From the NCBI GenBank assembly GCA_002269645.1, contig NIVC01002966.1:1-29948 (forward strand): a stretch of 29,948 nucleotides of DNA, in the 5' to 3' direction. The notes under the pieces are model-generated. The model ran no database searches, had not been told where the DNA came from, and was given only the letters and a program-made list of their open reading frames with translations. Below are positions 2,241 to 27,415 of the stretch, piece by piece (positions within the stretch are counted from its first letter, which is position 1; each line of letters opens with the position of its first letter). This DNA is from Macrostomum lignano (taxonomy: Eukaryota). Made by a program: the position numbers and the translations under genes.

Positions 2241-2467
2241 CCTATTCGATCACTCAAACCAGCCCCAGACCCGAGTTTCCAAATAAATGGGGCGAATGTG
2301 GGAATCGAACCCATGAGCCTGGATATGACCTAACCCCAAAATTTCTCTATCTATGTACGCTAAGTAGCTCGCTCAGAACCCGGTTACTTTTAAATTCAAT
2401 CAACTAAAAGCAAACCAGTTAATTTTACAGATGAAAAACAGAACAGCATGATCGAGTCTAATCTCAC

Positions 2468-2732: not shown

Positions 2733-2782
2733 GATTGAGGCGGCTGGCAAAGCTTAATGGCTATAAAATAAGCTTAGCGTCT

Positions 2783-3950
2783 TTTGGTGTCGTCTGTTGT
2801 CGTCTGTTGTCTGTTGTAGTTTAGTGTTGTCTGTTGTCGGTTGGTGTCGTCTGTTGTCGGTTGGTGTCGTCTGTTGTCGTTTGGTGTCGTCTGTTGTCGT
2901 TTGGTGTCGTCTGTTGTCGTTTGGTGTCGTCTGTTGTCGTTTGGTGTCGTCTGTTGTCGTTTGGTGTCGTCTGTTGTCGTTTGGTGTCGTCTGTTGTCGT
3001 TTGGTGTCGTCTGTTGTCGGTTGGTGTCGTCTGTTGTCGTTTGGTGTCGTCTGTTGTCGTTTGGTGTCGTCTGGTGTCGTTTGATTTCGTTTGCTGTCGT
3101 TTGGTGTCGTCTGTTGTCGGTTGGTGTCGTCTGTTGTCGCTTGGTGTCGTCTGTTGTCGTTTGGTGTCGTCTGTTGTCGTTTGGTGTCGTCTGTTGTCGT
3201 TTGGTGTCGTCTGTTGTCGTTTGGTGTCGTCTGGTGTCGGTTGGTGTCGTCTGGTGTCGGTTGGTGTCGTCTGTTGTCGTTTGGTGTCGTCTGTTGTCGT
3301 TTGGTGTCGTCTGTTGTCGTCTGTTGTCGTCTGTTCTCTGTTGTAGTTTAGTGTCGCCTGTTTTCGTCTGTTGTCTGTTGTCGTGGTGTCGTCTGTTGTC
3401 GTTTGGTGTCGTCTGTGGTCGGTTAGTGTCGTTAGTTGTCGCCTGTTGTCGTTTGTTGTCGTCTGTTGTCGCTTGGTGTCGTCTGTTGTCGTTTGGTGTC
3501 GTCTGTTGTCGTTTGGTGTCGTCTGTTGTCGTTTGGTGTCGTCTGTTGTCGTTTGGTGTCGTCTGTTGTCGGTTGGTGTCGTCTGTTGTCGTTTGGTGTC
3601 GTTTGGTGTCGGTTGGTGTCGTCTGGTGTCGGTTGGTGTCGTCTGTTGTCGTTTGGTGTCGTCTGTTGTCGTTTGGTGTCGTCTGTTGTCGTCTGTTGTC
3701 GTCTGTTCTCTGTTGTAGTTTAGTGTCGCCTGTTTTCGTCTGTTGTCTGTTGTCGTGGTGTCGTCTGTTGTCGTTTGGTGTCGTCTGTGGTCGGTTAGTG
3801 TCGTTAGTTGTCGCCTGTTGTCGTTTGTTGTCGTCTGTGGTCGGTTAGTGTCGTTAGTTGTCGCCTGTTGTCGTTTGTTGTCGTCTGTTGTCGGTTGGTG
3901 TCGTCTGGTGTCGTTTGATGTCGGTCGCTCGGTGTCGTCTCTTATTAATT
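2783..3950. repeat. 20-bp minisatellite (TTGGTGTCGTCTGTTGTCGT, two related 10-mers) with a 372-bp higher-order duplication
   Basis: Direct reading; variant block CTGTTCTCTGTTGTAGTTTAGTG recurs at 3331 and 3703. Confidence 0.97.
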
Positions 3951-5784
3951 TCTGTCGTTTGCTATCGGTTTCTGACGTTTTTTTTCAACGGACAAATTTA
4001 CAGCTACAAAGAATAGAAGCGAATTCTTTGCTTTTTATTCTGAAATCCATGGCTTTAGGGAGCGACAAACCGCTTGCGGATTGGTCTCTGCAGGCCGCAC
4101 AACTGGGGAAGAGGGTTAACAGCGATTCACGTTGTGACTTCTTTTCTCACCTCCTCCTCTGCACCCCAGCACTGCAGTACCCGTAGCTACATAGCTGTGA
4201 ATGCAACGAAGTTGTTCAAGCGATAATCAGGATTACGTGTGTAGATACGAGCCTGCGATTGAGTTAAGCCCTATGGAGCGATCATTTTATTTAGCAGCAG
4301 GACTGGAGGCTACTACATGCATGCGGAATAAATCCAGAAAAAATAGCTTCAAAGTAGACAGAAACTGAGACAAAAGACATGGTCTAATGCCTTGAAGTCG
4401 TACAAGACAACGCGTGTCATAAAAGTGTCATAAAAGTATTAGAAAAACTCACGCGGCTAATCCTGCGGTTTAACAGATGTAAACAAAACTTTCTTCTAAC
4501 TTTTATTTAATAGGATTATTAAACTGCTCTCAATCAATCGACCTCTTTAGCTCGATCGAGTCGCAATGCTGATACGTTATGCACTCTATCTGTGCAAGAT
4601 CCGCAGAAAGACCCTTACAGCTTCATCTCATCGCATTCCCGTACTAATTTTATTTGAGGCTAGACTTCTATTCTCACACATTGACCAAATGCGGGTCGAA
4701 GTGCCAGGGAGAGGGAGAGGCCCAAGCTTTTCCTGTTGGAGAAAAAGAAACCTTATTTGGTCCGCGATTTGGACTCTACCGCGTGCCCAGTTTTCAAATT
4801 CCACTTCGACACGCTTCTCCGCAGATTGTTTGGACTGTGACGAATAAATAAACTCATCTGCTACGACCCGGATCAGATCCTGTCATATTCTCAATTGATG
4901 GATGAGTGATGGCAACTTTTTTTCTTATTATTTCATGCCGAACTTCTGATTTTCCACTCAGATGATTTTGATAAATAAATAAAGCTAGATGAGTTGTGGA
5001 GATTAATCTTCGAGTAAATAATGATAATAATTAATTAAAAGTGCAAGAGCGCTTGGGACGGGTTGTCGCTGCAAAATTAATTAGTCATCGGAGTATCAAG
5101 TCAGTTGGATGCTTTTGCACTAAACTTCCACCCTCTCTCACCTTTTGCAACTTCTCTCAAGTGTTTTTTCCTAAGATTTTTCTTTGTAAGTTGATCCAAA
5201 TAAGTACATATAAGTCCAAAAGAGGATTGCGGAAAAAACATCGAGCCGTATAGTTGTTTTCGCTACGCAGAAGCCATAATAAAAAAGGTATGACGACTAC
5301 AGAGACATTGTATCATTTCATTCTTCTTTTATTCGGTAGTTCAATTTTCATCTAGTAAAACTGTCTCTGTTTGCTTTATATGCGATGAAGCATGACTTTC
5401 TCGGGAGCTGAATATATCATAAAAATCTTCCGGATCTATAAATAACTACTTTAGAATGCATGTGTTTATTTCCTGAACATAGAGCTAGAAATTCTCTAAT
5501 AACTTCTGTTAGTGACATACGCTCGTGCAATAGTCTATGGCCGCTGCGCCTCCCTCATCCCTTCCTAATATATAAGTGTCCTACCTTCATAATCTTGTTA
5601 CAACCCCCGCTAACATTAATGTGGTCCTAAAGCCAAATAAACAAGCAAAGCAAGATACGAGCTTCGTTATTCATCAAGCACTAGAGTTGCCATCAGAGCA
5701 TCACAGTTAGTCTCTTAAATGTTTTAAAAAATATGAACTTTATTTGGAGTGGCTGGAAAATTTTTGTGTCTTCGTTGGCACTAG

Positions 5785-6552
5785 TGTCTCTTGGTGGGCG
5801 CTCCGTCTCTTGGTGGGCGCCCCTGTTTCTTGGTGGGCGCATTGTCTCTAGGTGGGCGCCCTGTCTCTTGGTGGGCGCCCCTGTTTCTTGGTGGGCGCAT
5901 TGTCTCTAGGTGGGCGCCCCTGTCTCTTGGTGGGCGCCCCTGTTTCTTGGTGGGCGCATTGTCTCTAGGTGGGCGCCCCGTCTCTTGGTGGGCGCCCCTG
6001 TCTCTTGGTGGGCGCTCCGTCTCTTGGTGGGCGCCCCTGTTTCTTGGTGGGCGCTGTCTCTTGGTGGGCGCCCTGTCTCTTGGTGGGCGCCCTGTTCTTG
6101 GTGGGCGCTGTCTTGGTGGGCGCATTGTCTCTAGGTGGGCGCCCCTGTCTCTTGGTGGGCGCCCCTGTTTCTTGGTGGGCGCATTGTCTCTAGGTGGGCG
6201 CCCCTGTCTCTTGGTGGGCGCCCCTGTTTCTTGGTGGGCGCATTGTCTCTAGGTGGGCGCCCCTGTCTCTTGGTGGGCGCCCCTGTTTCTTGGTGGGCGC
6301 ATTGTCTCTAGGTGGGCGCCCCTGTCTCTTGGTGGGCGCCCCTGTCTCTTGGTGCGCGCCCCGTCTTTTCGTGGGCGCCCCTGTTTCTTGGTGGGCGCCC
6401 CGTCTCTTGGTGGGCGCCCCTGTTTTTTCGTAGGCGCAGTGTCTCTAGGTGGGCGCCCCTGTCTCTTGGTGGGCGCCCCTGTCTCTTGGTGGGCGCCCCG
6501 TCTCTTGGTGGGCGCCCCCGTCTCTTGGTGGGCGCCCCGTCTCTTGGTGGGC
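5785..6552. repeat. About 20-bp GC-rich minisatellite (TGTCTCTTGGTGGGCGCCCC) with recurring variant units
   Basis: Direct reading; no unique spacers. Confidence 0.97.
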
Positions 6553-7583
6553 ATCGTGTCTCCATCGACGATGTCAACATTGGATTAGACGTATATCTAC
6601 TACTGTAGTAGCTTTATTCAGCAATTGGCAAGGTGAGATTCTCAATTTATAGCCAAAAAAACCTGAAAACTTTCTGACGCGGATTTGGTGGCAAAAGTGC
6701 AATTACTAGTGCAGAATCATTCTACTTTAATGGTGCATGGACGCGTCAGAATACCTGGATTTATTTGAAACAATCGTCAGCAATTCAAATTTAAAATTGA
6801 TGAGTTGCAACTTTATGAGTTTGAAAGTTAAAAGCAAGTTTAAACAAATGCATCAAGAAATCAAATTTCGAGCTAAAGTTGCAGCTTAACTTAATCTTCT
6901 CATGGCAGTCACTTTAATAATTTTAACAAAATTTATATCCACCAAGTTAATTTAATACTTTGTGTTGCTAGCAATCAAATTGAAAATCGCAGTCTGATGA
7001 GGACGCACTTTTTCCCAAATCCCGCGCTAGCACATGGGCTCTAAACTTACTTGCCTACTGACAGTGGACAAGGGGCATTTTTATCCTTTTTCTGCAAATT
7101 GTCATAGAATCTATACTAGATATAATGTCTGGCCATACTAGTAGTCATAATAACATAGGCGTAGCTTTTTGGGTCGTAAATCATCGCTTCCGAAGTTGGT
7201 CTCACAGCCACCTGCGCCTCACTCAGTGTTGAGACGGGCGCCAGATGGTCTGAGAGGATGCGGGCGGTAGCTTTTTTCTCATCATTTTGACAGGCCATCA
7301 AGATTTATGAGGTCAGAGCCTATTGTTCGGATTCACTCAAGCGTGTGACAGCTTTGACAGCTATGCGTTTTACCCCTGAAAGTACTTTGGGATTAGCGAT
7401 TAGCGATTTCTCTTCATTATCTTCACTTTCTATTTAATAAGAGCTTTCTAATGTATATTTTTTCATTAATTTCTGTCAATCCTACGCGAAAAGTCATAAA
7501 TCATTTTGTTGCGATTTTGAGTGATTTATGGCCGCACCTGTCATCTTTTTACGACCCTGTGGGAACTGATAGGATCTCTCGGT

Positions 7584-10992: not shown

Positions 10993-11695
10993 CTGATGAG
11001 GATTAAAATACGATGATGGGTCTGCTGGGAATCTACGTTGAGACTGAAGGTAAAATCAACACACCCTCTGATGATACTGGAGGTTGTAACATCAGTGCAT
11101 GACTAGCAGTCAGCGCCCCCCCCCCCGTTGGGGAGCCAAAAAATGCAGTAAAAGTTTTTAATAAACTACATGTAGCGTCTCATTGCAGCAGCCTCAGCAA
11201 TCCCTTGTAAGCCTTGACATCTCAGCAATTCTCCCCCATAATCCTTAAAATATCAACTTTCCCCCCTCAACATCTCAGCGATGACCCCAATAAGTCTTGA
11301 AATCTTAAAAAATCTCCTGTCAACCTTCTAACCTTAACCCTAACCCTAAAGCATTGAAATTTCAGTAATTCTCCCCAAGAGAATAGCATTAGCATTACAT
11401 CATTATAGCGATTCCCTCCAAGCCGTCGACATCGTAGTGACTCCAAAATGAATCTCTTAACTTCAACATGACGCTTCTTTGATCAGCGACCCCCGTGAGG
11501 AGCCAACAAATAATTTGATAAAAAGTTTTGAATAAACTACATTTAGCTTCTGACTTTAGCCTTGACATCTCAGTTATTCCCCCGTGAGCATTGAGCATTG
11601 AGACAGCAACTATTCCCCCCGTAAGCTTTGATTTAAAATTCAAAGCCATCCTAAAACCGATAAGAAAGAATTCAATCTCTAATGGATTGACTTAC

Positions 11696-12576
11696 TTGAA
11701 AACTCGTTTAGACTGGTCGCTAAAATCTGACAGAAACTTTCTCTCTAGCCGGATTACCAATCGTCCCATCGCCCACAGCAGCTCTCTGAAGCGGTCGTAA
11801 CTGTGGCACAGGTAGTTCAACACATCGTCACAGCCTAGAAAGCTCATGAGGATCTTTAGCGCCATCGACCGGCCAACCTCGGAGATGCACTCGCCCAGAC
11901 AGAAGGTGACTAGACGGAGGAGGTCGCCTCTGGTTGGCTGTAGGTGCTGCAACAACTGCTGCGGCTCCTGACGCTGGCAGACGGTCAGAATTAGCGACAA
12001 GGTGCAGATTCTCAGGTGCTCAGTGTCGCGAGTTTTCCCTACAACGCCCAGGAAAGGGAAGAAGAGGCGCAGAGTGCCGGACTCCAGGAACGGCTGTCGG
12101 GTGCGCCTGTCAATGACCAGACGCTGCTGCAGTGCCGCCACAGAGCAGAGCAGATGCACACCTTGGCTGTCCAGGTGCGGCGGATGAATGTCCGGATACA
12201 GCCGAACAGTCTCCATCACCAGCATAGCCAGCACACCTGGAGTGCACCACAGCAGACAGGCCAAATCCGGTATGATGTCGGACTTCTTGCAAAGTTCAAT
12301 AATAGCTGAATATCGCCTAGTATTGTCGGCTAGATCGGCCAGGGACATTGCCCAGTCCAACTGCTGCTGCTGCTGTTCTTGCAGCTGCTGATAGGCAAAT
12401 TCTGAGCCGTCGAAAGTTTCCCCGACTGGACTGTCTGTCGCCCCGTTGTACAGAATGTCCTGCTGCATCAGGGGCACGGAAGCTGAGTTGGTAAAGTCGC
12501 AATAACCCCTGCTCCATTCGATATCATACGATGCCTGGTGTGAGTGCTGCATCGGGTGGTCGGAAAGGTCAGCCAT
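11696..12576 (-). CDS. CNOT9: CNOT9/Rcd1 (CCR4-NOT subunit 9)-like protein, exon 1; divergent homolog, 439 aa after splicing
   Basis: IIELCKKSDIIPDLACLLW, LYPDIHPPHL, FFPFLGVVGKTRDTEHLRICTL and LNYLCHSYDRF match Rcd1 armadillo motifs ([62 protein letters not shown]). Phase-2 donor AA|GTAAGT at 11695 is frame-compatible with exon 2. Confidence 0.9.
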
Positions 12577-13891: not shown

Positions 13892-14963
13892 TTTTTGATC
13901 CTTATCGACTGTGAGTTTTGTCTCCTGAGAAAAGCAGAGTTCTCATTCAAACTGGCTGTCTGCTCCTTCTTATCTAGTTTGAACTGTCTGCTTTTGGTCG
14001 ACTGTCTATCAAAAAGCAAGCTTTAACTGCACTAACCTCCTACCCCTAATCGCCTATGCGTCTCTGGTTGCCGATAGATACAATTACCAACTAATCTGTT
14101 TCGAAAGAAAATGGCGAATAGATACCAGAGAGGCCCAAGGAGAGACAGCAAGAAAAAAGATCGACATAGGCCAGCGCGACCCCGCGCTTAGGGGGCAACA
14201 CAGATTGCCTAAAATAGCTCGTAACAAATTAACTATTCAGTTAACGAAGTTGTTGCGAACTCTCTCCACCAGCACTATGCCGGTAGTCCGCATACAGGAA
14301 AGGCAAGAGAGCAGCTTAACCGTACACGTGGTCACTACAAGATGGACCATCACTTCCTTTGTTAGCCAATGCCAGAATCTGGATATTAATCACCTACTTC
14401 AGACTATGGAATTCTTGCCGGTTGCATGTAGCATCCATTGAAATGTACAATAAATCTTAAATTTGACTGAATGTTTACAAAAACTGAAAACTTCAGCGCT
14501 TACCCCTTACCCTTCTTATATTTATTGTATTTCAATTAGCAAAGCATGCAAATATTACATTGGGCGTTGAGTTGTAATTAACGACAATCCAAACCTTGGA
14601 ACCCGTTTTAATGTTTTTTTTTCTGTGTACCTTCAAAAACACTTATATGATCCTTCGGAATGAGGGAGAGGGACAATACAATTGTTAGCAACTGACTACT
14701 CATTAGTAATGTGCCATGCTAGCGGAAAATTAGTGAAATGATGTCAGCAATCAGAGGAGAGGTAGACTGACGGTCCCTTTCTCATTTTTAAAGTTATCTG
14801 GATGTCCTCTTCGAAAGTTATTAATTTTGCTTAATAGTAAGTCGTCCCTATTAAAATTTTCATCAATTGTCTTGCCTCTACGCTTATCTACCCATCCCTC
14901 CATGCTCTCGAATTGACGTCTCAGTCAACAACAAACAGGTGAATATTAGCCGCCAGGTGCGAC

Positions 14964-15339
14964 TCAATCTCGTTCGCTTGGCATCAGCGAGTAGCGCGGG
15001 CAATCCCGACGCCGTTTCAGGCATCGACCGCGGTGGAGCCACCGAGCCGACCTGTCGCACACGCAGCCTCCGACGCAGTCACTGCAGCGTTCCCGTCGCG
15101 CTCTCTGTCGACCACACTGACGAAGATCGCGGCAAACGCAATTAGAGTAGCGAAATTGCGGCGGGCAAAGCTGATCACCGCCTTGCTCTTCAGAACACGG
15201 GCGCGACAGAGCCGGGTCCATGGCTAGGACGGGAATGCCAACGTTGGCGCAGTCTCGCAGGGCGGCTCGAACCACCGGACACAGACAGCGCTCTGGGCTA
15301 CGCTGGTTGCGACAGGCGCACAGACGTTCGGTGCACCAG
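14964..15339 (-). CDS. BMPER: Crossveinless-2/BMPER exon 9 (end of C8 domain, TIL domain, stop)
   Basis: (N)WCTERLCAC..CLCPVVRAALRDC..CPPQFRYSNCVC..CVGGCVC..C. AAG acceptor at 15340, frame-compatible with exon 8; TGA at 14964. Confidence 0.85.
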
Positions 15340-15605
15340 CTTTGGGTAGTGATTGATAGGACCATGTGCATTCAGATGATGTTATATTAGTATTTTTGCA
15401 ATGATTTGAGAGGTCAATTGTTTGGGCCCAGAACAATGTCTATGTAACCCGGACGTTAAAAAATTTTCAAAGAGCAGCTTCAAACTAAATTACCATTGCA
15501 ATACCTGGACCCGGTTAATAACTCAGGTTAATAGCACACCCCTTTGCCCGCAATGGTCGCGAACATATTTCAAAGATAAATTCATTATCTAGAAGACTTT
15601 CTCAC

Positions 15606-16208
15606 TTGAAGTACAACTGCACCTGCACTCGATCCGAGCAACGCAGTCTCCGAAGCGCTCCGCAATGCTGCCTACGCCATCGCCTTAAACGACGTCGTTG
15701 TTTTGGTCGACCGCGAACCTCTGGGCAGGTCGCTAGCAACCGTCTTCGTCGACTGCCTCTCCTGCTACCGCGACTGTTCCCAGCTCGACAGATACCCCGA
15801 CGCCAAGACCTGTCTGGACGCCGTCGTCTTCGCTTGGCCGTCTCGCACAGCCCCTTGAACTGATTAGCGAGACTGCGCGGCCTCGCCTGCAGTTCCAGAT
15901 AGTCAGCGCCGTCCCATAGAATTGCAAGCCGACTAGAAGCTCCGGACACTCCAGACAGCGAGACCAACGCGTGTCCGGAAACGATTTCCATAGCAACCAA
16001 CGGCTCAGAGAGTGTTGGATCAATACGTGCGAGTCCAGTTGCTAGGACAGCTCGGCTGACCCAGCGACCGTTCAGGCGAGGCTGCAGTTCGGGGCCGAGC
16101 GTGAGCCGCCTGCCAGCGCCCCATCGGATGCTGAGCGTGGCGGGTACTCGACCGCCCGCTGTGAATCTGATTGATAAGCCTGTTCGCCTGCGTCTTGCTA
16201 GGGTGTAC
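15606..16208 (-). CDS. BMPER: Crossveinless-2/BMPER exon 8 (VWD body, Arg-rich linker, start of C8)
   Basis: Acceptor TTGACAG at 16209; YTLARRRR...ILWDGADYLELQARPRSLANQFKGLC (VWD WDG..GLC motif); donor AA|GTGAG at 15605; 603 nt, phases consistent. Confidence 0.85.
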
Positions 16209-16241
16209 CTGTCAATTTTTGTTTGGAGTCTTGGGTTTCAC

Positions 16242-16265
16242 ATCCTCCTATATACTAAAAATGGC
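16242..16265 (+). mobile_element. Helitron-like 5' terminus in a cv-2 intron (3' end not located)
   Basis: CATCCTCCTATATACTAAAAATG shares CTATATACTAAAAATG with 27901. Confidence 0.3.
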
Positions 16266-16777
16266 AAAATATCAAATATTCAACGTGCCAATCTTAGTAT
16301 CGAGATACCCTTAAATCGAGGACGTAGCCAAAATTTTAATCGTGCAGGGACATCGCTAGGGGCATTAACACAAGGAGCTTTAGCACCAGGGGCTTTAACA
16401 CCAACCCTCAATTCCCTCTGCTACGCTTCTGCCGTAGATACAAAATTAGGAAAGCTAGCAGTAGAATAAAAAGCTAGAAGTAAGAGTATGAGTATGTTTA
16501 CGGCTTCTACAGTCTTTAACCACTGCAAGAGCTAAATACTTCACTTTCTCTCCGTCCTGTAGAGCCGTCAGAAAATGAACTAAAAAAGTGGCACAAGTAG
16601 CGCAAGCACGAGCAGTATGTACGAGCTTATGTATGTTAGGAATGAAAAGGGTGTAAAGGGTGTAAACTTTAAATTCTTCGTTGACCGAGGACGTACACTG
16701 TAGTAGAGACATTTCCAGTTGCGGGAGGGAATTGGAAGGTAGAGCTGACGTTGGTTCGACAGCATTACTATGCTCAC

Positions 16778-16983
16778 CGACAGCCTTGAAGCATCTCGGC
16801 CGATCGAGCGTCGAAAGTTCGCAGCCTCTGCCGACTTGGCAGCCAGACGCAGACAGCCGACGCGTAGGTGTCGTTGCGTTGCTGACCGTCCGTCGATGCC
16901 AGACAGTCCAGCTGACGGCAGGACATCTGGCCAGAGTGGCAGGAGCACAGTGAGCACTTGTCGGGGCGCCACGTCTCGCCGTG
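16778..16983 (-). CDS. BMPER: Crossveinless-2/BMPER exon 7 (truncated VWC5, start of VWD)
   Basis: Acceptor CTCCCAG at 16984; HGETWRPDKCSLCSCHSGQMSCRQLDC...AVCVWLPSRQRLRTFDARSAEMLQGC; donor CG|GTGAG at 16777. Confidence 0.88.
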
Positions 16984-17301
16984 CTGGGAGAGATTTAGAA
17001 TAAAGCGGAAGTTTATGTCAGGAAAGCGTGTTGGGCTCATGGGTGCACTTCGAGTTTTTGAGTATTTGATATACGCATCATCTGATTGACTCTTGATTAT
17101 GACATGGAGACCTTGAACGAGAATCTGAAGTGTTCGGCCCCACCAAAAACACGGAGTATTAGTTTATAACTCAGTTTTGCAATTTTTTGCAAATAATTGA
17201 CTCTAGACTTTTTTTAATTCCTCGAAAGTTCATTCTGGTTACTATTGACTCTGGCCTGAGAAACAATGAGGACTGCAAGGCCAAAGATCCATCAAAGACA
17301 T

Positions 17302-17356
17302 GATCATCTTCTTCTTCATTATCAACATCATCATCATCATTATTATCATCATTATC

Positions 17357-17408
<52 letters not shown>

Positions 17409-17430
17409 CCATCATCACCATAATCATCAC
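17302..17430. repeat. (CAT)n trinucleotide microsatellite, intronic
   Basis: Direct reading; source of the polyH, polyD, polyM and polyI ORFs. Confidence 0.95.
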
Positions 17431-18181
17431 TCAGATGATTTACTGGTCCAAAGCGAAGCTGTGGCAGAAAATCCGCAAGAATGTTACAATTTTCGCAGCG
17501 TTTCCAATTAACATGACGAAATCCAAGATGCCACAACTGTACCAGCACTGTGGAATCGAGGTTCAAATCAGAACCTTACGCGCAATCTGAGAAGCACAGC
17601 CCTAATCTCTTTGCATACCCTTGAACTAGTGAACTAGATTCATCTAGATCTGTCCGAGTTTTCTCTTTCCCTCTCGCATTTGGTTTATTATTTCTGCTAG
17701 GCAACTATAAATCTTGGACAATAACTTTCTACCCAACTGTCTAAACCGGTCCCCCATTCCTAGTCAAAGGAGAAAGTCGCTAGTAGATGATAAACGTTTC
17801 TATGTGGTCCATCAGTTAGATGCTTATACCACTGACCATATTGGAAAGCTGACGATTAATAATTTTCTTTTTATCTCGCCACAGTTCATCGGCAGGTGAC
17901 TTTGCCGACAGCTGATTTTGTCTGGGCAACAAAATTTTGACTGGCCGCCAATCAAGCAGATTTTCTGACTTAGATAGGAGGATCGCTCTGATTAATCATG
18001 GATGTACCTCTTTTCCAAAGAAACTTCGGTTGCTCTTATCGTTATATCGTCTATGGCAAAAATCCATTCAGAGCTAGGCTAATTTGTTGCAAGTGTGCAG
18101 ATGTACAACCGACAGCTCAGCCGCAGCTATTGCGCGGCGCATCTGAAGGCTCCATCCAAGTCCAAGGTCAGTCCAAGGACT

Positions 18182-18370
18182 AGGGGGGGGGGTCGCCACA
18201 CACACACCTCCAATTACCCCAGCTAATGCTGGCACCCATTTTACGGCTGGGTGATCTGAAGCAATGCAGAGTTAAGTGTCTTGCTCAAGTACACAAATTG
18301 TTTTAGTGGGATTGGGAATCGAACCCCGGAACTCAAGTCGTGAGTCCAACGTTCTGACCACTAGGCTACA
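18182..18370 (-). mobile_element. tRNA-derived SINE with a CORE (MIR-like) domain
   Basis: Minus strand: A box TAGCCTAGTGG, B box GGTTCGATTCCC, then TGTGTACTTGAGCAAGACACTTAACTCTGCATTGCTTCAGATCACCCAGCCGTAAAATGGG, resembling the CORE consensus TGTGACCTTGGGCAAGTTACTTAAC...CTGTAAAATGGG. Confidence 0.75.
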
Positions 18371-18416
18371 ACCTCAATCTCTAAGCTTAAAAATTGATGT
18401 AATGTCAAAGCTTTCT

Positions 18417-18585
18417 TAGAGGCAGGGGGGTTGTGTGCACCCTGGCGCACTTTAAGCGACATTGTCACACAACCGGCGAGAGGCATTACTGCCCATTCCG
18501 CCGACTCCACTGAGCAGGAGGCACACAAGCGCGCGGATACGTACGCAGTCATACGCACAGGTAGGAGTGTACAGCGGCCCTAGAT
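18417..18585 (+). repeat. Dispersed repeat (probable MITE fragment), copy 1
   Basis: About 130 bp are the reverse complement of 25225-25362; the 3' end CAGCGGCCCT resembles the reverse complement of 27567-27615. Confidence 0.8.
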
Positions 18586-18738
18586 TTAATTATCGTTAGG
18601 CATGTACACTTCACTGTGCCTTCACTGTGCCTTGGGGGTTGGCCTCAAGGGCGTTAATAGCACGAGCAGAGCCAAGCCGAGATTCCAATTTAGCCCCAAA
18701 TTAATGTGACAAGAATTTAGGAATACAGAGCAGCTCAC

Positions 18739-18891
18739 CCGATAGCGTCTACCGCTGGAGTCGCCGCAGTCCTCCTGTCTGCGGCCACTGCTGCAGACTT
18801 TGCAACACTCTGACGGACTTGGCAGCAGCTGCTGCGACTCCGGACAGGTCAGAATCGGACAGTTAGTTCGTCGACAATGAACCGTGCCCGC
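18739..18891 (-). CDS. BMPER: Crossveinless-2/BMPER exon 6 (VWC4 C-terminal half, VWC5 start)
   Basis: AGTVHCRRTNCPILTCPESQQLLPSPSECCKVC...CGDSSGRRYR; acceptor CCACAG at 18892, donor GTGAG at 18738; 153 nt, phase 0/0. Confidence 0.9.
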
Positions 18892-19072
18892 CTGTGGGTT
18901 GCGTCAAGGAAGTCTGGGATTATTTCATATGATTTTTGTACCACCTTAGCAAGTGCCTGAAGAAAGAAGAAGCAAAGATGTTTCCCCACGTAAATTTCGA
19001 CAATTTGTCAGAGAAGCCAAAATCTACTTTCAGAAATCAGTCACGCTAATTGTATCTTCAGAGCAGAACTAC

Positions 19073-19197
19073 CTGACATGAGCAATGGGTGCAGGCGTCC
19101 TGCCGCCAGCTGGTGCCATTGACGTACGCGGAGCCTTCGAACAGGCACTGATCCAAGCTGGTCATGCGCCTGAGACGGCGGTCTTCGCCAAATTGTT
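19073..19197 (-). CDS. BMPER: Crossveinless-2/BMPER exon 5 (VWC4 N-terminal half)
   Basis: QCLFEGSAYVNGTSWRQDACTHCSCQ; acceptor TTTTGCAG at 19198, donor CAG|GTAGT at 19072. Confidence 0.9.
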
Positions 19198-19404
19198 CTG
19201 CAAAATTCGAAAAATGAACAAAAACTTTTTTAGCACCATGCCAGTTCGATATTTCAACTGGGAATTCAAACTGGTTAAATAATTTACGCTCGTAGGCAGG
19301 TGTCCCTTTTAAAAATTTACGCCTTCAAACTACTAATTACTCGTTTCGAAAACAATTATGTCATGACTAATGAATCTTTGAGCGCATGTCATGAAAGAGA
19401 CATA

Positions 19405-19545
19405 GAGATATAGAGAAAGAGAAGAGAGGGAGAGAAGGGAGAGAGGGAGAGAAGGAGACAGATAGAGAGGGGAGAGAAGAGAGAGAAGGGAGGGTTGGAG
19501 AGGGAGAGAGAGAGGGAGAGAGGTAGAGAGAGAGAGAGAAGAGAG
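19405..19545. repeat. GA-rich simple repeat, intronic
   Basis: Direct reading. Confidence 0.9.
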
Positions 19546-19575
19546 GTCACGGCGTGTTTAAAAAAAATTGAATAT

Positions 19576-19617
19576 GGGCTACCGGTTTCGAGCCTCTGGG
19601 CTCTTCGTCAGCTGCCC
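19576..19617 (-). ncRNA. Minimal type I hammerhead ribozyme-like motif (Penelope-like element type)
   Basis: Minus strand GGGCAG-CTGACGA-A-GAGCC-CAGA-GGCTC-GAAA-CCGGTA-GCCC: CUGANGA and GAAA cores, 5-bp stem II, palindromic ACCGGT stem III, GUA triplet; stem I imperfect. Confidence 0.7.
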
Positions 19618-19701
19618 GTGTTTCTAAGTCAAGTAAGTAAAATGCTTAGAGATTGTGAAGGCAAATAATATTTTACCCAATGCGAAAGACAAAAAACTCA
19701 C

Positions 19702-19886
19702 TTCTGCAACTCATGCACTGGCCGTCCATCTGTTGCACCTCACGTGGGCAGTTGGGCACGTGACAGACATCCTTGTGGCAGGCCAGAGTGCCACCCGAGC
19801 ACCGGCACACGATTGATTGGTCGTCGAATGGTCTCACGATTTCGTCTGGCAGCATCGGCAACTGCTTTAGCGAGCAACCGAAGCAG
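19702..19886 (-). CDS. BMPER: Crossveinless-2/BMPER exon 4 (VWC3)
   Basis: CFGCSLKQ...VCRCSGGTLACHKDVCHVPNCPREVQQMDGQCMSCR; acceptor CCAACAG at 19887, donor A|GTGAGT at 19701. Confidence 0.88.
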
Positions 19887-19938
19887 CTGTTGGAGAAATG
19901 CATCTGGCTTGTACTTGCATTTTAATGTAATTACTTGT

Positions 19939-19981
19939 AACTAACAAACAAACAAACAAACAAACAAACAAACAAACAAAC

Positions 19982-20026
<45 letters not shown>

Positions 20027-20027
20027 C

Positions 20028-20086
<59 letters not shown>

Positions 20087-20115
20087 GACTGACTAACTAA
20101 CTAACTGACTGACTG

Positions 20116-20194
<79 letters not shown>

Positions 20195-20259
20195 GACTAA
20201 CTAACTGACTGACTAACTAACTAACTGACTGACTGACTAACTAACTAACTGACTGACTG

Positions 20260-20294
<35 letters not shown>

Positions 20295-20350
20295 GACTGA
20301 CTAACTAACTAACTGACTGAGTAACTAATCAACTGACTGACTAACTAACT
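19939..20350. repeat. (AAAC)n followed by (CTAA/CTGA)n tetranucleotide microsatellite, intronic
   Basis: Direct reading. Confidence 0.97.
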
Positions 20351-20439
20351 ATATAAATAGAATAAGCGACTAAATAATTTCCCAGCGTTCCTGAGTCTCC
20401 CGTAATTTTACATCCCTGTTTATTATACAGAGGACAGAC

Positions 20440-20723
20440 CTGGGGCAACACTGGCCCGGCAACCTCAGCTGATACTCTGGCGAGCATGGCGGATGGCACA
20501 GCCTGCGGAACTCGGTGACAACACCTGCCACGCAGAGGCTGATCTCGCACGCATCTGACGATTGAGGCCGCTGGACCAGCTCACGATGAAGCAGCAGCTG
20601 CCGGTTGCCAGGCTGGCGAAGTCTGCAGGAGCGACAGTTCTGGCAGCAGACGTCATTCTGAGTGACGTAGCAAGAGGTGTCCACACTGGGGCACTGAGCC
20701 AGCCAACAGGAGTAAATGCCGTT
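20440..20723 (-). CDS. BMPER: Crossveinless-2/BMPER exon 3 (VWC1 C-terminal half, VWC2)
   Basis: NGIYSCWLAQCP...CCQNC...CVAGVVTEFRRLCHPPC...GQCCP; GVVTE matches BMPER VWC2 as recalled; acceptor ATGCAG at 20724, donor AG|GTCTG at 20439. Confidence 0.9.
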
Positions 20724-20976
20724 CTGCATAACGAGTCAATTTGGGAACAAAATCAAATAGCAAGTCACGCATATTCTGGTTTTCTGCTGACAAATGGAGT
20801 CAAATATCACGCTACTAAGATATTTAATGTTCTCAAAAATCAACTTGTCCACTGATCAAACAGATCAATATAGATCGTACTCATCTATCTATGCATGAAT
20901 TTCACTTTTCATCAACTTAATCAGGCATCGACTGACCAATAAAATCATCAATAGAGCTTATTTACTCATCAAAGGC

Positions 20977-21400
20977 ACTCATCTACTCACCAATAGAACT
21001 CATCTACGAGTACTAACCAATAGAACTCATCTACTAACCAATAGAACTCATCTACTAACCAATAGAACTCATCTACTCACCAATAGAACTCATCTACTCA
21101 CCAATAGAACTCATCTACTCACCAATAGAACTCATCTACTCACCAATAGAACTCATCTACTCACGAATAGAACTCATCTACTCACGAATTGAACTCATCT
21201 ACTTACCAATAGAACACATCTACTCACCAATAGAACTCATCTACTCACCAATAGAACTCATCTACTCACCAATAGAACTCATCTACTCACCAATAGAACT
21301 CATCTACTTACCAATAGAACTCATCTACTGACCAATAGAACTCATCTACTCACCAATGTAGCTCAACTACTCACTAATAGAACTCATCTACTCATCAATG
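20977..21400. repeat. 21-bp minisatellite (CCAATAGAACTCATCTACTCA), about 20 copies, intronic
   Basis: Direct reading. Confidence 0.95.
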
Positions 21401-21529
21401 GAAAAAAGCAAATCAGATTGTCTAGTCATTAATAAAATAACGGGCTTTTCCGTACTCGGTCAAAAAATCAGAATTCTCTAGAGAGAGAAACTTCTACCAA
21501 CCGAAGACATCAACAAGCGTCTCACTCAC

Positions 21530-21606
21530 TCGACAGCTGCACTGATGACACGGCGGACTAATAAAGTCCCTTATTTGTCCACTGCATCGGAGAAATTGTT
21601 CTTCAC
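21530..21606 (-). CDS. BMPER: Crossveinless-2/BMPER exon 2 (VWC1 start)
   Basis: (G)EEQFLRCSGQIRDFISPPCHQCSCR; acceptor TCTTCAG at 21607, donor GTGAGT at 21529; phases match both neighbours. Confidence 0.82.
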
Positions 21607-21676
21607 CTGAAGATAAAATCAATACTTGTCAAAAATCTGTCCCATTTTATAAACACACCTATGAAGCAGAACTCAC

Positions 21677-21743
21677 CAACAGAGTATGGTGATACAAGAA
21701 GCAGATTAATAAATAACAGCAATGAATTTGTGCAGATATCCAT
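21677..21743 (-). CDS. BMPER: Crossveinless-2/BMPER exon 1 (signal peptide)
   Basis: MDICTNSLLLFINLLLVSPYSVG is a hydrophobic leader; phase-1 donor G|GTGAGT at 21676; the nine exons sum to 2076 nt (691 aa plus stop). Confidence 0.78.
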
Positions 21744-21949: not shown

Positions 21950-22752
21950 GATGAAAGAGGAGAGAAAGAAAGAGAAAGGTGGGAGAGGGGAGAGATGCAA
22001 ATAGAGGTTAAAGACGGGAAGACCGAAAAAGATAGAAGAGAAGGAAGAAAGGGGAGAGGATGGAGAGACGGAGAGAGGGGAGAGGGAGAGAGGAGAGATG
22101 AGAGAGAGGGGGAGAGAGAGAGGGGGGAGAGGGAGAGAGGGGGAGAGGGAGAGAGGAGAGATGGGAGAGAGGGGGAGAGAGGGAAATAGGAGAGATGAGA
22201 GAGGGGGAGAGAGGGAAATAGGAGAGATGAGAGAGGGGGAGAGAGGGAGAGAGGAAAGATGAGAGAGGGAGAGAGAGGGAGAGAGGAGAGATGAGAGGGG
22301 GAGAGAGGGAGAGAGGAGAGATGAGAGAGGGGGAGAGAGGGAGAGAGGAGAGATGAGAGAGGGGGAGAGAGGGAGAGAGGAGAGATGAGAGAGGGGGAGA
22401 GAGGGAAAGAGGAGAGATGAGAGAGGGGGAGAGAGGGAAAGAGGAGAGATGAGAGAGGGGGGAGAGGGAGAGAGGAGAGATGAGAGAGGGGAGAGAGGGA
22501 GAGAGGAGAGATGAGAGAGGGGGAGAGAGGGAGAGAGGAAAGATGAGAGAGGGAGAGAGAGGGAGAGAGGAGAGATGAGAGGGGGAGGGAGGGAGAGAGG
22601 AGAGATGAGAGAGGGGAGAGAGGGAGAGAGGAGAGATGAGAGAGGGGAGAGAGGGAGAGAGGAGAGATGAGAGAGGGGGGAGAGGGAGAGAGGAGAGATG
22701 AGAGAGGGGGAGAGAGGGAAAGAGGAGAGATGAGAGAGGGGGAGAGAGGGAA
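21950..22752. repeat. GA-only compound repeat with an approximately 25-28 bp unit (GAGAGGGAGAGAGGAGAGATGAGAGAGGGG)
   Basis: Direct reading; nearly pure purine strand. Confidence 0.95.
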
Positions 22753-22844
22753 AGAGTCGTAAAACCCTTAAGCACTGGCGCGGTAGCGCAGATGCTTAAG
22801 CGAATTGTAGATGTTTGGAATATTTTATATTCTTCCTGAGAGGG

Positions 22845-23135
22845 TAGACGGGAAAGAGGGAGAAAGGGAGAGAGGGAGAGAGAGAATAGAGAGAGAAGAG
22901 AGAGAGGAAAGGAGGAAGAGAAGTAGAAAAGGCAGGTTGGGAAGAGGAACAAGAGAGAGGGATAAGGAGAGGGGGAGAAGGAGAGAGGGTAGAAGGGATG
23001 GGGGAGAGAGAGGGAGAGGGAGAGGGAGAGGGAGAGGAGTGAGGAGAGATAGGGAAAGAAGTAGTGGTGGAGCGGGGGAGAGGGAGAGGGAGGGAAAGAG
23101 ACTTGAGTGGATTACCAAGAAGAGATAGGAAAGAG
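22845..23135. repeat. GA-rich low-complexity tract
   Basis: Direct reading. Confidence 0.9.
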
Positions 23136-23744
23136 TAAACTCAGAACGGGTTGAAATGAACTCTTCCGTACAGACCACCATATTGGATCTAGAAATCCTG
23201 ATAAAGCATCAGTGGTCGCATACGGCTTTCTAAGAAAAGCAGTGAAAGTCGGTTCTAGCTAAGTTAGAAATAAAAAAAACTGTTTAGAGTCCAGCGCGCT
23301 AACAGTCATGAGCCCACTTTGGCTGGTCAATTGCATGTGACTTAAGTGAAACTTTTCAGCGGGCAGCTCAACTGATAAGAGCTCAGCACTGCAATTGACT
23401 TACAGATTTTTGTGCCTAGATATGCCATGCTCTGTTATCAAAGCCCTGTCTCACTCTACAGGTCATAAGGCTAACTGGTTTCTACACTGTAAAGCGTTGA
23501 GCATTGAGAAGCAGGGTATTCGTTTCTGCTTTGGATTTTGGAGCTAACAATTTTGAAATCAGAAATGCGAGAGCGGCAGCTGAACTGGTGCCAGCTGGCA
23601 GTCTGTCTAGCTACCCTAGTTAGCTTGGCTGAGTGTGGACGTGCGTCTTATTGTTCGAAAGTGGAAAATGAAGGTTAGGTTCTGCACTATTGTATTTAGC
23701 GTTTGCTTTGACCTTGGTATATACTGAAGCCTCGATAGCACCCC

Positions 23745-26355: not shown

Positions 26356-26781
26356 ACACCGCAAGGCACCTACTGCCGTGACCGGATCAGGACCAAGCCT
26401 CTGCCTGACCTGCACCCAATCATGACCTTCACCTGGGAGGTGATAGCCGGACGTGCTGAAGCGCTGGACTCGGTCTTTTATGGGAGATTAAGCTACGACA
26501 GCTCGCAAAACATGGTCCGCTACGACTACAGAGAGCCCGAATCCATGTACAAAGGTCCATTTTACAATATAGGCACCCTGACTGTTATTCACGACTTTAA
26601 TTCTGGTGTGGCTTATTATATCGACGGAGTGAGAGGGAACTGCACAGACCAGGCCATCGGGTCCGAGTTCATCGACACGAACGATGTGGACATCATCGAC
26701 TCGCCTGGTTGGCACCTGGTTGAGCTGAGGAGTCCTAAAGACCTGTTCCGGTTCGATGACTCTTACCAGTATGAGGGCAAG
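26356..26781 (+). CDS. Ependymin/LolA-like repeat-domain protein, exon starting a second repeat; gene continues
   Basis: TPQGTYCRDRIRTKPLPDLHPIMTFTWEVIA...YDSSQNMVRYDY...IHDFNSGVAYYID...GNCT...DLFRFDDSYQYEGK; TTCTAG acceptor, AAG|GTAAG donor; 426 nt. Confidence 0.88.
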
Positions 26782-26797
26782 GTAAGGCGTTTCTGGG

Positions 26798-27415
26798 CGC
26801 TTACGGACATTTCCCCTCCGGCGTTTCCCCTCCGGACACTTCCCCTCCGGCGTTTCCCCTCCGGACACTTCCCCTCCGGCGTTTCCCCTCCGGACATTTC
26901 CCCTCTGGATATTTCCCCTCCGGACATTTCCCCTTCATCTATAACGAAATAACAGTGCCTTCGGACATGTCCAAAGAGAACATAAGTTGCATGTATATAT
27001 ATATGTATGTATAGCAGCATAGCCACATATATATTAATAATAAAGAGAATAATAATATATTATATTATAATTTTATTATAATAAAACCTATAATAAAACA
27101 TAATAAAACCATCTACTCTCACTTTTTACTTACATAATTTTTAAAATAAAAGCGATCTAACAGCATAACTACATGGATGTGACGAACATGCGTGCAAAAC
27201 TTTTTTTGGCATGTTCTGAAGCTCTGTTATTTCGTTATAGCTGGATGGGAAATGTCCGGAGGGGAAACGCCGCCGAGGGGAAATGTCCGGAGGGGAAACG
27301 CCGCCGAGGGGAAATGTCCGGATGGGGAAATGTCCGGAGGGGAAACGCCGCCGAGGGGAAATGTCCGGAGGGGAATCGCCGGAGGGGAAACGCCTGAGGG
27401 AAATGTCCGGTAGCC
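26798..27415. mobile_element. Non-autonomous foldback (Mutator-like) MITE, 618 bp, with a 9-bp TSD
   Basis: Exact direct repeat GTTTCTGGG at 26789-26797 and 27416-27424. Ends CGCTTACGGACATTTCCC versus reverse-complemented GGCTACCGGACATTTCCC. Each arm is an array of 14-15 bp CGGACATTTCCCCTC units plus unique inverted sequence (TATAACGAAATAACAG) around an AT-rich spacer. Confidence 0.85.

What the first reader, a model, noticed from the sequence alone, without database searches (positions are those of the whole stretch)
19576..19617. Hammerhead ribozyme motif in sense orientation inside intron 4 of cv-2
Seen: on the transcribed (minus) strand, CUGACGA and GAAA cores flank a perfect 5-bp stem II (GAGCC/GGCUC, CAGA loop), then a palindromic ACCGGU stem III and a GUA triplet, with predicted cleavage between 19580 and 19579. 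Known: minimal type I hammerheads with palindromic stem III occur in Penelope-like element pseudo-LTRs and work as dimers. Caveats seen: one extra A after the core, and stem I (GGGC/GCCC) is offset by two bases. Inference: a retroelement remnant that, if active in cis or through dimerisation, could cut the pre-mRNA of a BMP regulator; no RT ORF is nearby, so it may mark a small non-autonomous ribozyme element.
Basis: partly seen in the sequence, partly recalled or inferred. Interest (0 to 1): 0.7.

Follow-up and report, generated by a model that had tools for sequence, protein, structure and literature searches.

The report
Decayed retroelement-type hammerhead motif in intron
A 42-base sequence in a flatworm gene intron has the layout of the small self-cutting "hammerhead" RNAs carried by Penelope-like jumping genes, but it looks like a lone, damaged relic that is unlikely to cut the gene's RNA.

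Summary
The motif is in the sequence exactly as described, on the minus strand at 19617-19576. It reads GGGC-AG-CUGACGA-A-GAGCC-CAGA-GGCUC-GAAA-CCGG-UA|GCCC. It lies 84 nt inside a 504-nt GT..AG intron (19701-19198), between von Willebrand factor type C (VWC) repeat exons. The window is the whole contig NIVC01002966.1 of Macrostomum lignano.

The layout matches the minimal hammerheads of Penelope-like elements (PLEs) on five published hallmarks. One defining feature fails. Helix I is pushed out of register by an AG dinucleotide, whereas every intact comparator has helix I abutting C3.

Chance is unlikely: a Markov null gave 0 hits in 40 Mb for the hallmark descriptor.

The motif is solo. I found no second hammerhead, no reverse transcriptase (RT) and no other copy of the element in about 90 kb of this genome. 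The monomer is predicted to fold into an inactive rod. Of three duplicated loci, two keep the motif and one has lost the helix III palindrome.

Most likely this is an inert, decayed PLE-type or retrozyme-type hammerhead remnant. The cv-2 identity and the intron number are unverified. A whole-genome copy search could not be run.

The parts
19614..19617 (-). Helix I 5' strand, GGGC. It can pair with GCCC at 19579-19576, but only 2 nt out of register.
19612..19613 (-). AG dinucleotide between helix I and C3. Removing it would give an in-register GGGC/GCCC helix I with the C2.1-G1.1 pair seen in all 12 comparators of the alignment. It is present in all three M. lignano copies.
19605..19611 (-). 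Conserved core box CUGANGA (CUGACGA; C3-A9).
19604..19604 (-). Unpaired A between A9 and G10.1. This is a hallmark of PLE minimal hammerheads.
   Evidence: PMC4209133; 33 of 33 intact comparators have it
19590..19603 (-). Helix II: GAGCC / CAGA loop / GGCUC. Five Watson-Crick pairs, closed by G10.1-C11.1.
19586..19589 (-). Conserved core box GAAA (G12-A15.1).
19581..19586 (-). Palindrome ACCGGU, a minimal helix III. It cannot close as a hairpin. It could form 6 bp between two copies (-8.3 kcal/mol).
19579..19582 (-). GUA cleavage triplet and N1.1. The predicted scissile bond is 19580|19579.
   Evidence: Inference from hammerhead numbering; not assayed.
19576..19579 (-). Helix I 3' strand, GCCC.
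19546..19575 (-). 30-nt A/U-rich stretch between the motif and the microsatellite. It may be the 3' end or 'tail' of the inserted element. Its boundaries are not established.
   Evidence: Analogy and PMC8557442.
19396..19545 (-). (CT)n-rich microsatellite directly 3' of the element on the transcribed strand. Its length varies among the three loci.
19623..19624 (-). Junction where the window lacks a 64-nt GC-rich block. That block precedes the motif in the two duplicated loci, L082 and L084.
19198..19701 (-). The 504-nt host intron: GT at 19701-19700 and AG at 19199-19198, phase 1.
19702..19886 (-). Upstream exon, encoding a VWC-like cysteine-rich repeat. The acceptor at 19887|19886 is inferred.
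19073..19197 (-). Downstream exon, the N-terminal half of a VWC domain. Joined to the exon at about 18891-18790, it gives a full-length VWC match.

Best explanation
The sequence is a solo, degenerate copy of a Penelope-like-element-type minimal hammerhead. The source was either a heavily 5'-truncated PLE pseudo-LTR or a short non-autonomous derivative of one.

It inserted next to a (CT)n microsatellite in an intron of a multi-VWC gene of Macrostomum lignano. This happened before the duplicated copies of this locus diverged.

Its catalytic boxes, helix II and palindromic helix III are intact. Helix I is displaced from the core by a 2-nt AG insertion. There is no second copy to dimerise with. 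The monomer prefers a rod-like hairpin that ties up C3-G5.

The motif is therefore expected to be spliced out with the intron without cutting the pre-mRNA, and to be drifting neutrally.

Shown: the anatomy, the position in the intron, the absence of partner or RT, the presence in two of three loci, and the architecture match to real PLE hammerheads. Inferred: the retroelement origin, the AG being an insertion, and the inactivity.
For: (1) All published hallmarks of PLE minimal hammerheads other than helix I register are present. These are exact CUGANGA and GAAA boxes, an extra base between A9 and G10.1, a G10.1-C11.1 pair, a palindromic 15.2-16.2 plus loop 3, and a GUH site.

(2) A metagenome scan used a pattern fixing only the two boxes and helix II. 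It returned 81 loci. Thirty-three matches are intact min-HHRs with the same layout, and all 33 have the extra base. The 12 matches without the extra base are not hammerheads.

(3) In those comparators, helix I and helix III were not part of the search pattern, yet they covary. 94% of cells are paired, and 0 of 500 shuffles reach the observed covariation score.

(4) One comparator family shows PLE structural hallmarks: inverted head-to-head copies and an optional ~35-nt 3' tail.

(5) Hammerheads of the same architecture flank a PLE ORF (RVT_1 / DUF8422 / HTH_animal) in L088. The same architecture also spans the unit junction of the Poseidon_Ac consensus.

(6) Chance expectation is 0 hits in 40 Mb for the hallmark descriptor.

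(7) Deleting AG would restore a 4-bp in-register helix I with the same C2.1-G1.1 pair as all 12 comparators of the alignment.

(8) About half of the eukaryotic family members in the comparator set carry disabling changes, so decayed solo copies are common.

(9) Evidence for inactivity: the monomer minimum-free-energy fold is -20.4 kcal/mol and pairs G2.1-C3-U4-G5 with CGGU, against -15.8 for the hammerhead-compatible fold. There is no second motif in the contig. Published PLE hammerheads are inactive as monomers and weak as dimers, or protein-dependent (PMC4209133; PMC11167929).

(10) Locus L084 has a 3-nt insertion plus a G>C change that destroys the palindrome, so there is no sign of constraint.
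Against: - No other copy of the element, and no PLE ORF, was seen in about 90 kb of M. lignano DNA.
- I could not search the whole genome, so membership in a repeat family is unproven.
- I found no report of PLEs or hammerheads in Macrostomum.
- Helix I, a defining feature, is out of register.
- The direction of the L084 difference is unknown. If L084 is ancestral, the palindrome arose secondarily.
- Rfam hammerhead models do not match. They also miss the bona fide comparators, so this negative carries little weight.
- The comparators were retrieved with a pattern taken from this motif, so their shared helix II sequence is not independent evidence.
Confidence: 0.65

Rival explanations
1. Chance look-alike. 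An intronic GC-rich imperfect hairpin happens to contain CUGANGA and GAAA in the right places, and it has no retroelement ancestry.
For: - The motif is single-copy in all M. lignano DNA available here.
- Helix I is out of register.
- The whole 42 nt folds as one rod-like hairpin with z = -4.1.
- Relaxed descriptors do occur by chance at about 25-50 per Gb.
- One duplicated locus lacks the palindrome, and the direction of that change is unknown.
- No Rfam hit.
Against: - The hallmark descriptor gives 0 hits in 40 Mb. My analytic estimate is under one hit per M. lignano genome.
- The GGGC/GCCC complementarity is explained by a simple 2-nt indel.
Confidence: 0.22
2. A functional, host-retained intronic ribozyme. 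It would cleave the VWC-gene pre-mRNA, in cis or through intermolecular dimers, and so tune expression. This would be analogous to the conserved intronic hammerheads of amniotes.
For: - Sense orientation, 84 nt into a short intron.
- Catalytic boxes intact and identical in two diverged loci, 42 of 42 bases.
- Intronic hammerheads with a proposed regulatory role exist in vertebrates (my own knowledge: HH9 and HH10).
Against: - The third locus has lost the palindrome and the GUA context.
- Conservation of the motif is no greater than that of the adjacent intron sequence.
- Helix I is out of register and helix III is minimal.
- There is no loop-loop tertiary contact architecture.
- No cis partner is present.
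- An inactive rod fold is favoured by 4.6 kcal/mol.
- Min-HHRs show no monomer activity in vitro (PMC4209133).
- Retrozymes are depleted from introns in vertebrates (bioRxiv 10.64898/2026.07.22.740005).
Confidence: 0.05
3. A structured element of another kind, such as a small-RNA precursor hairpin or a fragment of an unrelated repeat. On this view the hammerhead resemblance is irrelevant.
For: - Stable 54-nt hairpin: -20.4 kcal/mol, with 0 of 200 shuffles folding as well.
- A 64-nt GC-rich block adjoins it in the duplicated loci.
Against: - No Rfam family matches at E<=10 in the window or in L082.
- The stem is only 13 bp, with a 5x5 internal loop.
- With the 64-nt block included, the fold is no more stable than shuffles (z = +0.5).
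- The block is unrelated to the motif.
Confidence: 0.03

Closest known systems
Minimal hammerheads (min-HHRs) of Penelope-like element pseudo-LTRs (Cervera & de la Pena 2014, PMC4209133), for example the Poseidon_Ac hammerhead (PMC11167929)
   Same: - Type I topology with exact CUGANGA and GAAA boxes.
- An extra unpaired base after A9.
- A G10.1-C11.1 pair.
- Helix III reduced to an A-U pair plus a palindromic insert.
- A GUH cleavage site and a short GC-rich helix I.
- Occurrence as a solo copy without an ORF.

Poseidon_Ac reads ACCU|CUGAGGA|U|GCCUGCC..GUGGGC|GAAA|CG|UC|AGG.
   Different: - Helix I is displaced by 2 nt (AG) from C3.
- No family of copies has been demonstrated.
- No pLTR or ORF context is present.
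- Helix II is 5 bp, against the 6-8 bp reported for flatworm PLE motifs.
Metazoan non-LTR retrozymes (Cervera & de la Pena 2020, PMC7229834; Li et al. 2026 preprint)
   Same: Non-autonomous elements that carry type I hammerheads with a weak helix III and appear to derive from PLE pLTRs.
   Different: Retrozymes are tandem repeats of about 170-400 nt, with canonical loop-loop contacts. Here there is one copy and no tandem array. Retrozymes are reported to be depleted from introns.
Conserved intronic hammerheads of amniotes (Rfam Hammerhead_HH9 and HH10)
   Same: A sense-strand hammerhead motif inside an intron of a protein-coding gene.
   Different: Those are canonical, stable, active monomers under strong conservation. 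This one is minimal, out of register, missed by the Rfam models, and disrupted in one of three duplicated loci.
Sm-alpha SINE-like hammerhead of Schistosoma (my own knowledge; cited in PMC4209133)
   Same: A flatworm genome, a short non-autonomous retroposon carrying a type I hammerhead, and a helix III too weak for monomer cleavage.
   Different: Sm-alpha has a canonical helix I and II with tertiary contacts, and thousands of copies. No sequence similarity or copy number has been shown here.

Membership tests
PLE-type minimal hammerhead (min-HHR) | Exact catalytic boxes CUGANGA and GAAA at the correct spacing | tested here: met
   CUGACGA at 19611-19605 and GAAA at 19589-19586.
PLE-type minimal hammerhead (min-HHR) | One unpaired nucleotide between A9 and G10.1 | tested here: met
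   A at 19604. All 33 intact comparators have it, and the 12 pattern matches without it are not hammerheads. Stated as a hallmark in PMC4209133.
PLE-type minimal hammerhead (min-HHR) | Helix II closed by G10.1-C11.1 and at least 4-5 bp long | tested here: met
   GAGCC/GGCUC, five Watson-Crick pairs with a CAGA loop. This is shorter than the 6-8 bp reported for Schistosoma PLE motifs.
PLE-type minimal hammerhead (min-HHR) | Helix III reduced to A15.1-U16.1 plus a palindromic insert (dimer design), followed by H17 | tested here: met
   ACCGGU followed by A17 (GUA). The palindromic positions covary among comparators.
PLE-type minimal hammerhead (min-HHR) | Helix I (3-6 bp) directly abutting C3 and the cleavage site | tested here: not met
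   In register, only 1 of the 4 junction-proximal pairs forms. GGGC/GCCC pairs only with AG bulged next to C3. All intact comparators, the Poseidon_Ac hammerhead and the L088 hammerheads are in register.
PLE-type minimal hammerhead (min-HHR) | Member of a multi-copy family in the same genome, with compensatory changes | not testable with these tools
   No collection here holds the M. lignano genome for DNA search. In the roughly 90 kb reachable (window, L082, L084, L086, L087) the only copies are the duplicated loci themselves.
PLE-type minimal hammerhead (min-HHR) | Lies in a pseudo-LTR next to an RT/GIY-YIG ORF, or is a truncated remnant of one | tested here: inconclusive
   No [YF]xDD or GIY..YIG motif occurs in any frame of the window or of the duplicated loci. 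Solo copies are the majority in published genomes. The adjacency to a microsatellite fits the PLE insertion bias, but that is weak evidence.
PLE-type minimal hammerhead (min-HHR) | Self-cleavage, as a dimer or with PLE protein | not testable with these tools
   This needs a bench assay. Folding predicts that an inactive rod is favoured by 4.6 kcal/mol.
Rfam hammerhead families (Hammerhead_1, _3, _II, HH9, HH10) | Covariance-model score at or above the gathering threshold | tested here: not met
   No hit at the gathering threshold, and none at E<=10 in 601 nt or in L082. Control: the same models also miss bona fide min-HHRs in L006, L001, L043 and L037, so this does not exclude the PLE subtype.
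Non-LTR retrozyme | Tandem head-to-tail repeats, each carrying a hammerhead | tested here: not met
   No tandem or dispersed second copy is present in the window.
Conserved functional intronic hammerhead | Motif preserved by selection across copies or species | tested here: not met
   The motif is identical in L082 but disrupted in L084 by a 3-nt insertion plus G>C. The flanking intron is equally well conserved.

The most novel reading that the evidence does not exclude
The motif is a working, host-retained intronic ribozyme of a free-living flatworm. With help from a protein or from intermolecular pairing of ACCGGU between nascent transcripts, it cleaves the pre-mRNA of a multi-VWC (possibly BMP-modulating) gene in competition with splicing. 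The AG bulge and the rod-shaped alternative fold would act as a built-in off switch.
Probability: 0.04. Interest if true: 0.65.

Novelty: new member of a known kind. Interest (0 to 1): 0.25.

Why it matters
If the reading is right, this is an ordinary fossil of a class of retroelement ribozymes already known to litter invertebrate genomes. It adds Macrostomum lignano to the list, since I found no report of hammerheads or PLEs for this species. It also gives a clear example of how such motifs decay: a 2-nt indel at the helix I junction, and loss of the palindrome in a duplicated locus.

It would matter more if the motif cleaved, because sense-strand ribozymes in introns could then affect expression of a developmental signalling gene. 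The evidence here argues against that.

There are two methodological points. The Rfam hammerhead models miss this whole subtype. The "extra nucleotide" should be treated as diagnostic rather than as a defect.

Tried and rejected
- **Rfam scans.** Scans at the gathering threshold and at E<=10 found no hammerhead. I rejected this as evidence, because the control scan also misses bona fide min-HHRs.
- **Viral-contig scan.** The pattern scan found nothing.
- **Full-text sequence search.** Searching the paper library for the motif's strings returned only unrelated primer sequences. No supplements were held for the two key PLE papers.
- **Homologue search with VWC exons.** Concatenated VWC exons found nothing.
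- **Exact-product look-ups.** These failed for three window ORFs. They then succeeded for the 191-aa ORF, which identified the contig.
- **PLE RT search.** A search seeded with Poseidon_Ac, meant to reach M. lignano PLEs, returned 4606 hits, but none of the 120 listed is from Macrostomum. It was used only to fetch a PLE locus as a positive control. The look-up for P0037 failed.
- **64-nt block as a second hammerhead.** I tested whether the 64-nt block in the duplicated loci is a decayed tandem hammerhead. Its alignment score equals the shuffle mean, so I rejected the idea.
- **Collagen IV similarity.** A PDB sequence search suggested collagen IV NC1 similarity for two exons. Per-domain E-values are only about 0.014. 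I judged this a cysteine-pattern artefact, given the VWC hits.
- **Covariance model.** I did not build one from the comparators. They share helix II with the query by construction, so its score would be circular. I used explicit feature counts and pair counting instead.
- **Six-frame Pfam scan.** The tool refuses translations containing stop codons. I replaced the scan with motif regexes and targeted ORF scans.

Full report
**What is there**

On the minus strand, 19617-19576 reads GGGC AG CUGACGA A GAGCC CAGA GGCUC GAAA CCGG UA GCCC (coordinates checked).
- both catalytic boxes are exact;
- helix II is five Watson-Crick pairs with a CAGA loop;
- ACCGGU is a palindrome;
- a GUA triplet puts the predicted scissile bond at 19580|19579;
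- there is one extra A after the first box;
- a GGGC/GCCC helix I pairs only if AG (19613-19612) is bulged next to C3.

My own descriptor finds this as the only candidate on either strand of the window, and only when helix I may be offset. It stays the only candidate when one core mismatch is allowed and helix I is not required. So there is no second, even degenerate, hammerhead in the 30 kb.

**Is it more than chance?**

I generated 40 Mb of first-order Markov sequence with the window's composition.
- A relaxed descriptor hits once or twice. That is about 0.001 per window, or tens per gigabase.
- A descriptor built only from the published hallmarks gives 0 hits, even with helix I offsets of 0-2 allowed. 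Those hallmarks are the extra base, G10.1-C11.1 and a palindromic helix III.
- My analytic estimate for that descriptor is about 3e-10 per position, which is less than one hit per genome of this size.

**Where it sits**

The window is the complete contig NIVC01002966.1 of the Macrostomum lignano assembly GCA_002269645.1. It was identified through a 99%-identical Rcd1-like protein and an exact product look-up.

The motif lies 84 nt inside a 504-nt intron. The donor GAA|GTGAGT is at 19702|19701 and the acceptor TTTTGCAG| is at 19198|19197. Splicing keeps the reading frame. The downstream exon joined to the next one gives a full-length von Willebrand factor type C (VWC) domain at 55.8 bits. Further VWC-like exons lie upstream and downstream.

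Between the duplicated loci these exons differ by about 1.8%, against 6-8% for the introns. The cysteines are kept and there are no stop codons, so the gene looks real. The GenBank record has no gene model over it. I could confirm neither that it is cv-2/BMPER nor that this is intron 4. The motif is in sense orientation.

**Comparison with real PLE hammerheads**

Cervera and de la Pena (PMC4209133) define the minimal hammerheads of PLEs by several features:
- the conserved boxes;
- an unpaired base between A9 and G10.1;
- a conserved G10.1-C11.1 pair;
- palindromic 15.2-16.2 and loop 3;
- a short helix I;
- low activity that needs dimers.

To test this on data, I scanned metagenome contigs with a pattern fixing only the two boxes and the helix II sequence. 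It returned 81 loci with 83 matches.
- Thirty-three matches are intact minimal hammerheads with a palindromic helix III, a UH site and an in-register helix I of 3-7 bp.
- All 33 have the extra base.
- All 12 matches without the extra base are non-hammerheads, mostly in bacterial contigs.

Helix I and helix III were not in the pattern, yet they covary among these sequences. 94% of cells are paired, and 0 of 500 shuffles reach the observed covariation score.

The largest family comes from termite-gut metagenomes and presumably represents host DNA. It shows PLE structural hallmarks: inverted head-to-head copies and an optional ~35-nt 3' tail (compare PMC8557442).

There are two direct positive controls. 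A contig with PLE ORFs (RVT_1, DUF8422, HTH_animal) carries hammerheads of the same architecture on both sides of an ORF, one of them inverted. The Poseidon_Ac consensus carries one across its unit junction.

The Rfam hammerhead models miss the window motif. They also miss the bona fide comparators. That negative is therefore uninformative.

**The one failed feature**

In the alignment of 12 comparators plus the window, the window row is the only one that fails the three junction-proximal helix I pairs. All 12 comparators have C2.1-G1.1. The window has G1.1, and its C lies two bases further upstream. Deleting AG would restore GGGC|CUGA with four in-register pairs.

The simplest reading is a 2-nt insertion in a once-canonical motif. 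About half of the eukaryotic family members in the comparator set carry comparable disabling changes, so decayed copies are normal.

**Duplicated loci**

The DV1 assembly is known to be redundant (PMC5730564). I recovered two further copies of this locus.
- L082 (NIVC01000012.1) is about 93-95% identical overall. It has the 42 nt unchanged.
- L084 (NIVC01002965.1) reads GAAACC-GCT-GCTAGCCC. That is a 3-nt insertion plus a G>C change, and it destroys the palindrome.
- Both L082 and L084 carry a 64-nt GC-rich block directly 5' of the motif. The window lacks this block. The junction shows AAACAC microhomology, so a deletion in the window is likely.

The block is not a second hammerhead. All three copies share the AG. 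The adjacent intron sequence is as well conserved as the motif, so there is no sign of selection on it. With three sequences, the direction of the L084 change cannot be determined.

**Solo status**

I found no other copy of the element or its flanks in the window, L082, L084, L086 or L087, about 90 kb in all. No RT or GIY-YIG motif occurs in any frame. The metagenome comparators resemble the window only across the hammerhead itself.

I could not search the whole M. lignano genome. I found no paper reporting hammerheads or PLEs in Macrostomum.

**Would it cut?**

Several lines argue against cleavage.
- The 54-nt monomer folds into a rod at -20.4 kcal/mol (82% of the ensemble, z = -4.1). In that fold G2.1-C3-U4-G5 pair with CGGU of helix III.
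- The hammerhead-compatible fold is 4.6 kcal/mol worse.
- A helix III between two copies would be 6 bp (-8.3 kcal/mol), but no partner exists in cis.
- Published PLE minimal hammerheads show no monomer cleavage and only weak dimer cleavage at high Mg2+ (PMC4209133). The Poseidon_Ac ribozyme cleaved only with PLE protein and left no cleaved reads in RNA-seq (PMC11167929).
- The AG bulge sits at the junction, and I infer that it disturbs the core.

Cleavage of the pre-mRNA is therefore improbable. This is an inference, not an assay.

**Verdict**

Most likely (about 0.65) this is a solo, decayed PLE-type or retrozyme-type minimal hammerhead. It would have been carried into the intron next to a (CT)n microsatellite before the locus was duplicated, and it is now inert. 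Chance resemblance remains possible (about 0.2), because family membership in this genome could not be tested. A functional intronic ribozyme is unlikely (about 0.05).

This is a new member of a known kind, of modest interest.

Noticed in passing
window 1-29948; L084 (NIVC01002965.1); L082 (NIVC01000012.1): The window is an entire 29,948-bp contig of M. lignano. It is 99.8% identical to NIVC01002965.1 over about 17 kb (window 18094-1163). Identity drops to 92-94% in the ~2 kb around the hammerhead intron (window 20351-18161). This is a mosaic pattern, suggesting recombination or gene conversion between duplicated haplotypes, or an assembly chimera.
   Followed up: partly
window 14900-21700, minus strand: A multi-exon gene encodes at least four or five VWC (chordin-like cysteine-rich) repeats. 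It has no gene model in the GenBank annotation of this contig or of the two duplicated loci. Exons are about 3-4 times better conserved than introns between the copies.
   Followed up: partly
window 11692-12576 (-), plus a further exon downstream: An Rcd1/CNOT9-like gene (Pfam Rcd1, E = 1.4e-31), annotated as hypothetical protein BOX15_Mlig013979. At least five copies exist in the assembly (g1, g3, g5, g7 and others).
   Followed up: partly
window 2403-2753 (-): The first exon of a rhodopsin-family GPCR (7tm_1, E = 6e-11). In L086 the corresponding gene is called as a 422-residue product.
   Followed up: no
window 19938-20351: A very long (TAAC)n microsatellite: 103 units, 93% matches. It lies in the intron immediately upstream of the hammerhead-bearing one. 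Large CT-rich and other tandem arrays occur at 22008-23180, 2830-3850 and 5760-6560.
   Followed up: no
L082:2630-2693 and L084 (about 2851-2914): A 64-nt GC-rich block (CTGCAGTAGATCCGGGCATCGGGGAGCGGGAAGGCGCTGGTGCCTGTTCCGAAAACACCTGGGCG) lies directly 5' of the motif in the duplicated loci and is absent from the window. It has no Rfam match and no similarity to the hammerhead. It may be more of the inserted element.
   Followed up: partly
L004-L081 (many JGI termite-gut metagenome contigs); L022:607-686: Contigs from termite-gut metagenomes carry a repeat family with minimal hammerheads. Copies are often arranged head-to-head and inverted about 200 nt apart, and some have an optional ~35-nt 3' tail. 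L022, from a different dataset, has two hammerheads on opposite strands only about 30 nt apart. These look like host PLE remnants inside 'microbial' metagenomes.
   Followed up: partly
P0063: A protein annotated as 'hypothetical protein, partial [Escherichia coli]' is 62% identical to the Poseidon_Ac PLE reverse transcriptase. This is almost certainly animal DNA contaminating a bacterial assembly.
   Followed up: no
window 19703-19861 and 20631-20720 (-): Two cysteine-rich exons gave a weak PDB sequence match to the collagen IV NC1 domain, through a PM(M/L)P...VC...A.H...VP.CP pattern. Per-domain E is about 0.014. This is probably a cysteine-pattern coincidence with VWC, but I did not resolve it.
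   Followed up: partly
window 26422-26952 (+): A 176-residue ORF of ordinary amino-acid composition has no Pfam match and no exact product on record. It lies on the opposite strand, next to a repeat encoding RRFPSGHFPS-like units.
   Followed up: no
L006:828-982: The inverted-repeat arrangement of the termite PLE remnant scores as several miRNA precursor families in Rfam at sub-threshold level (for example mir-8517, 45 bits against a gathering score of 70). This illustrates that such inverted transposable-element copies can mimic miRNA hairpins.
   Followed up: no
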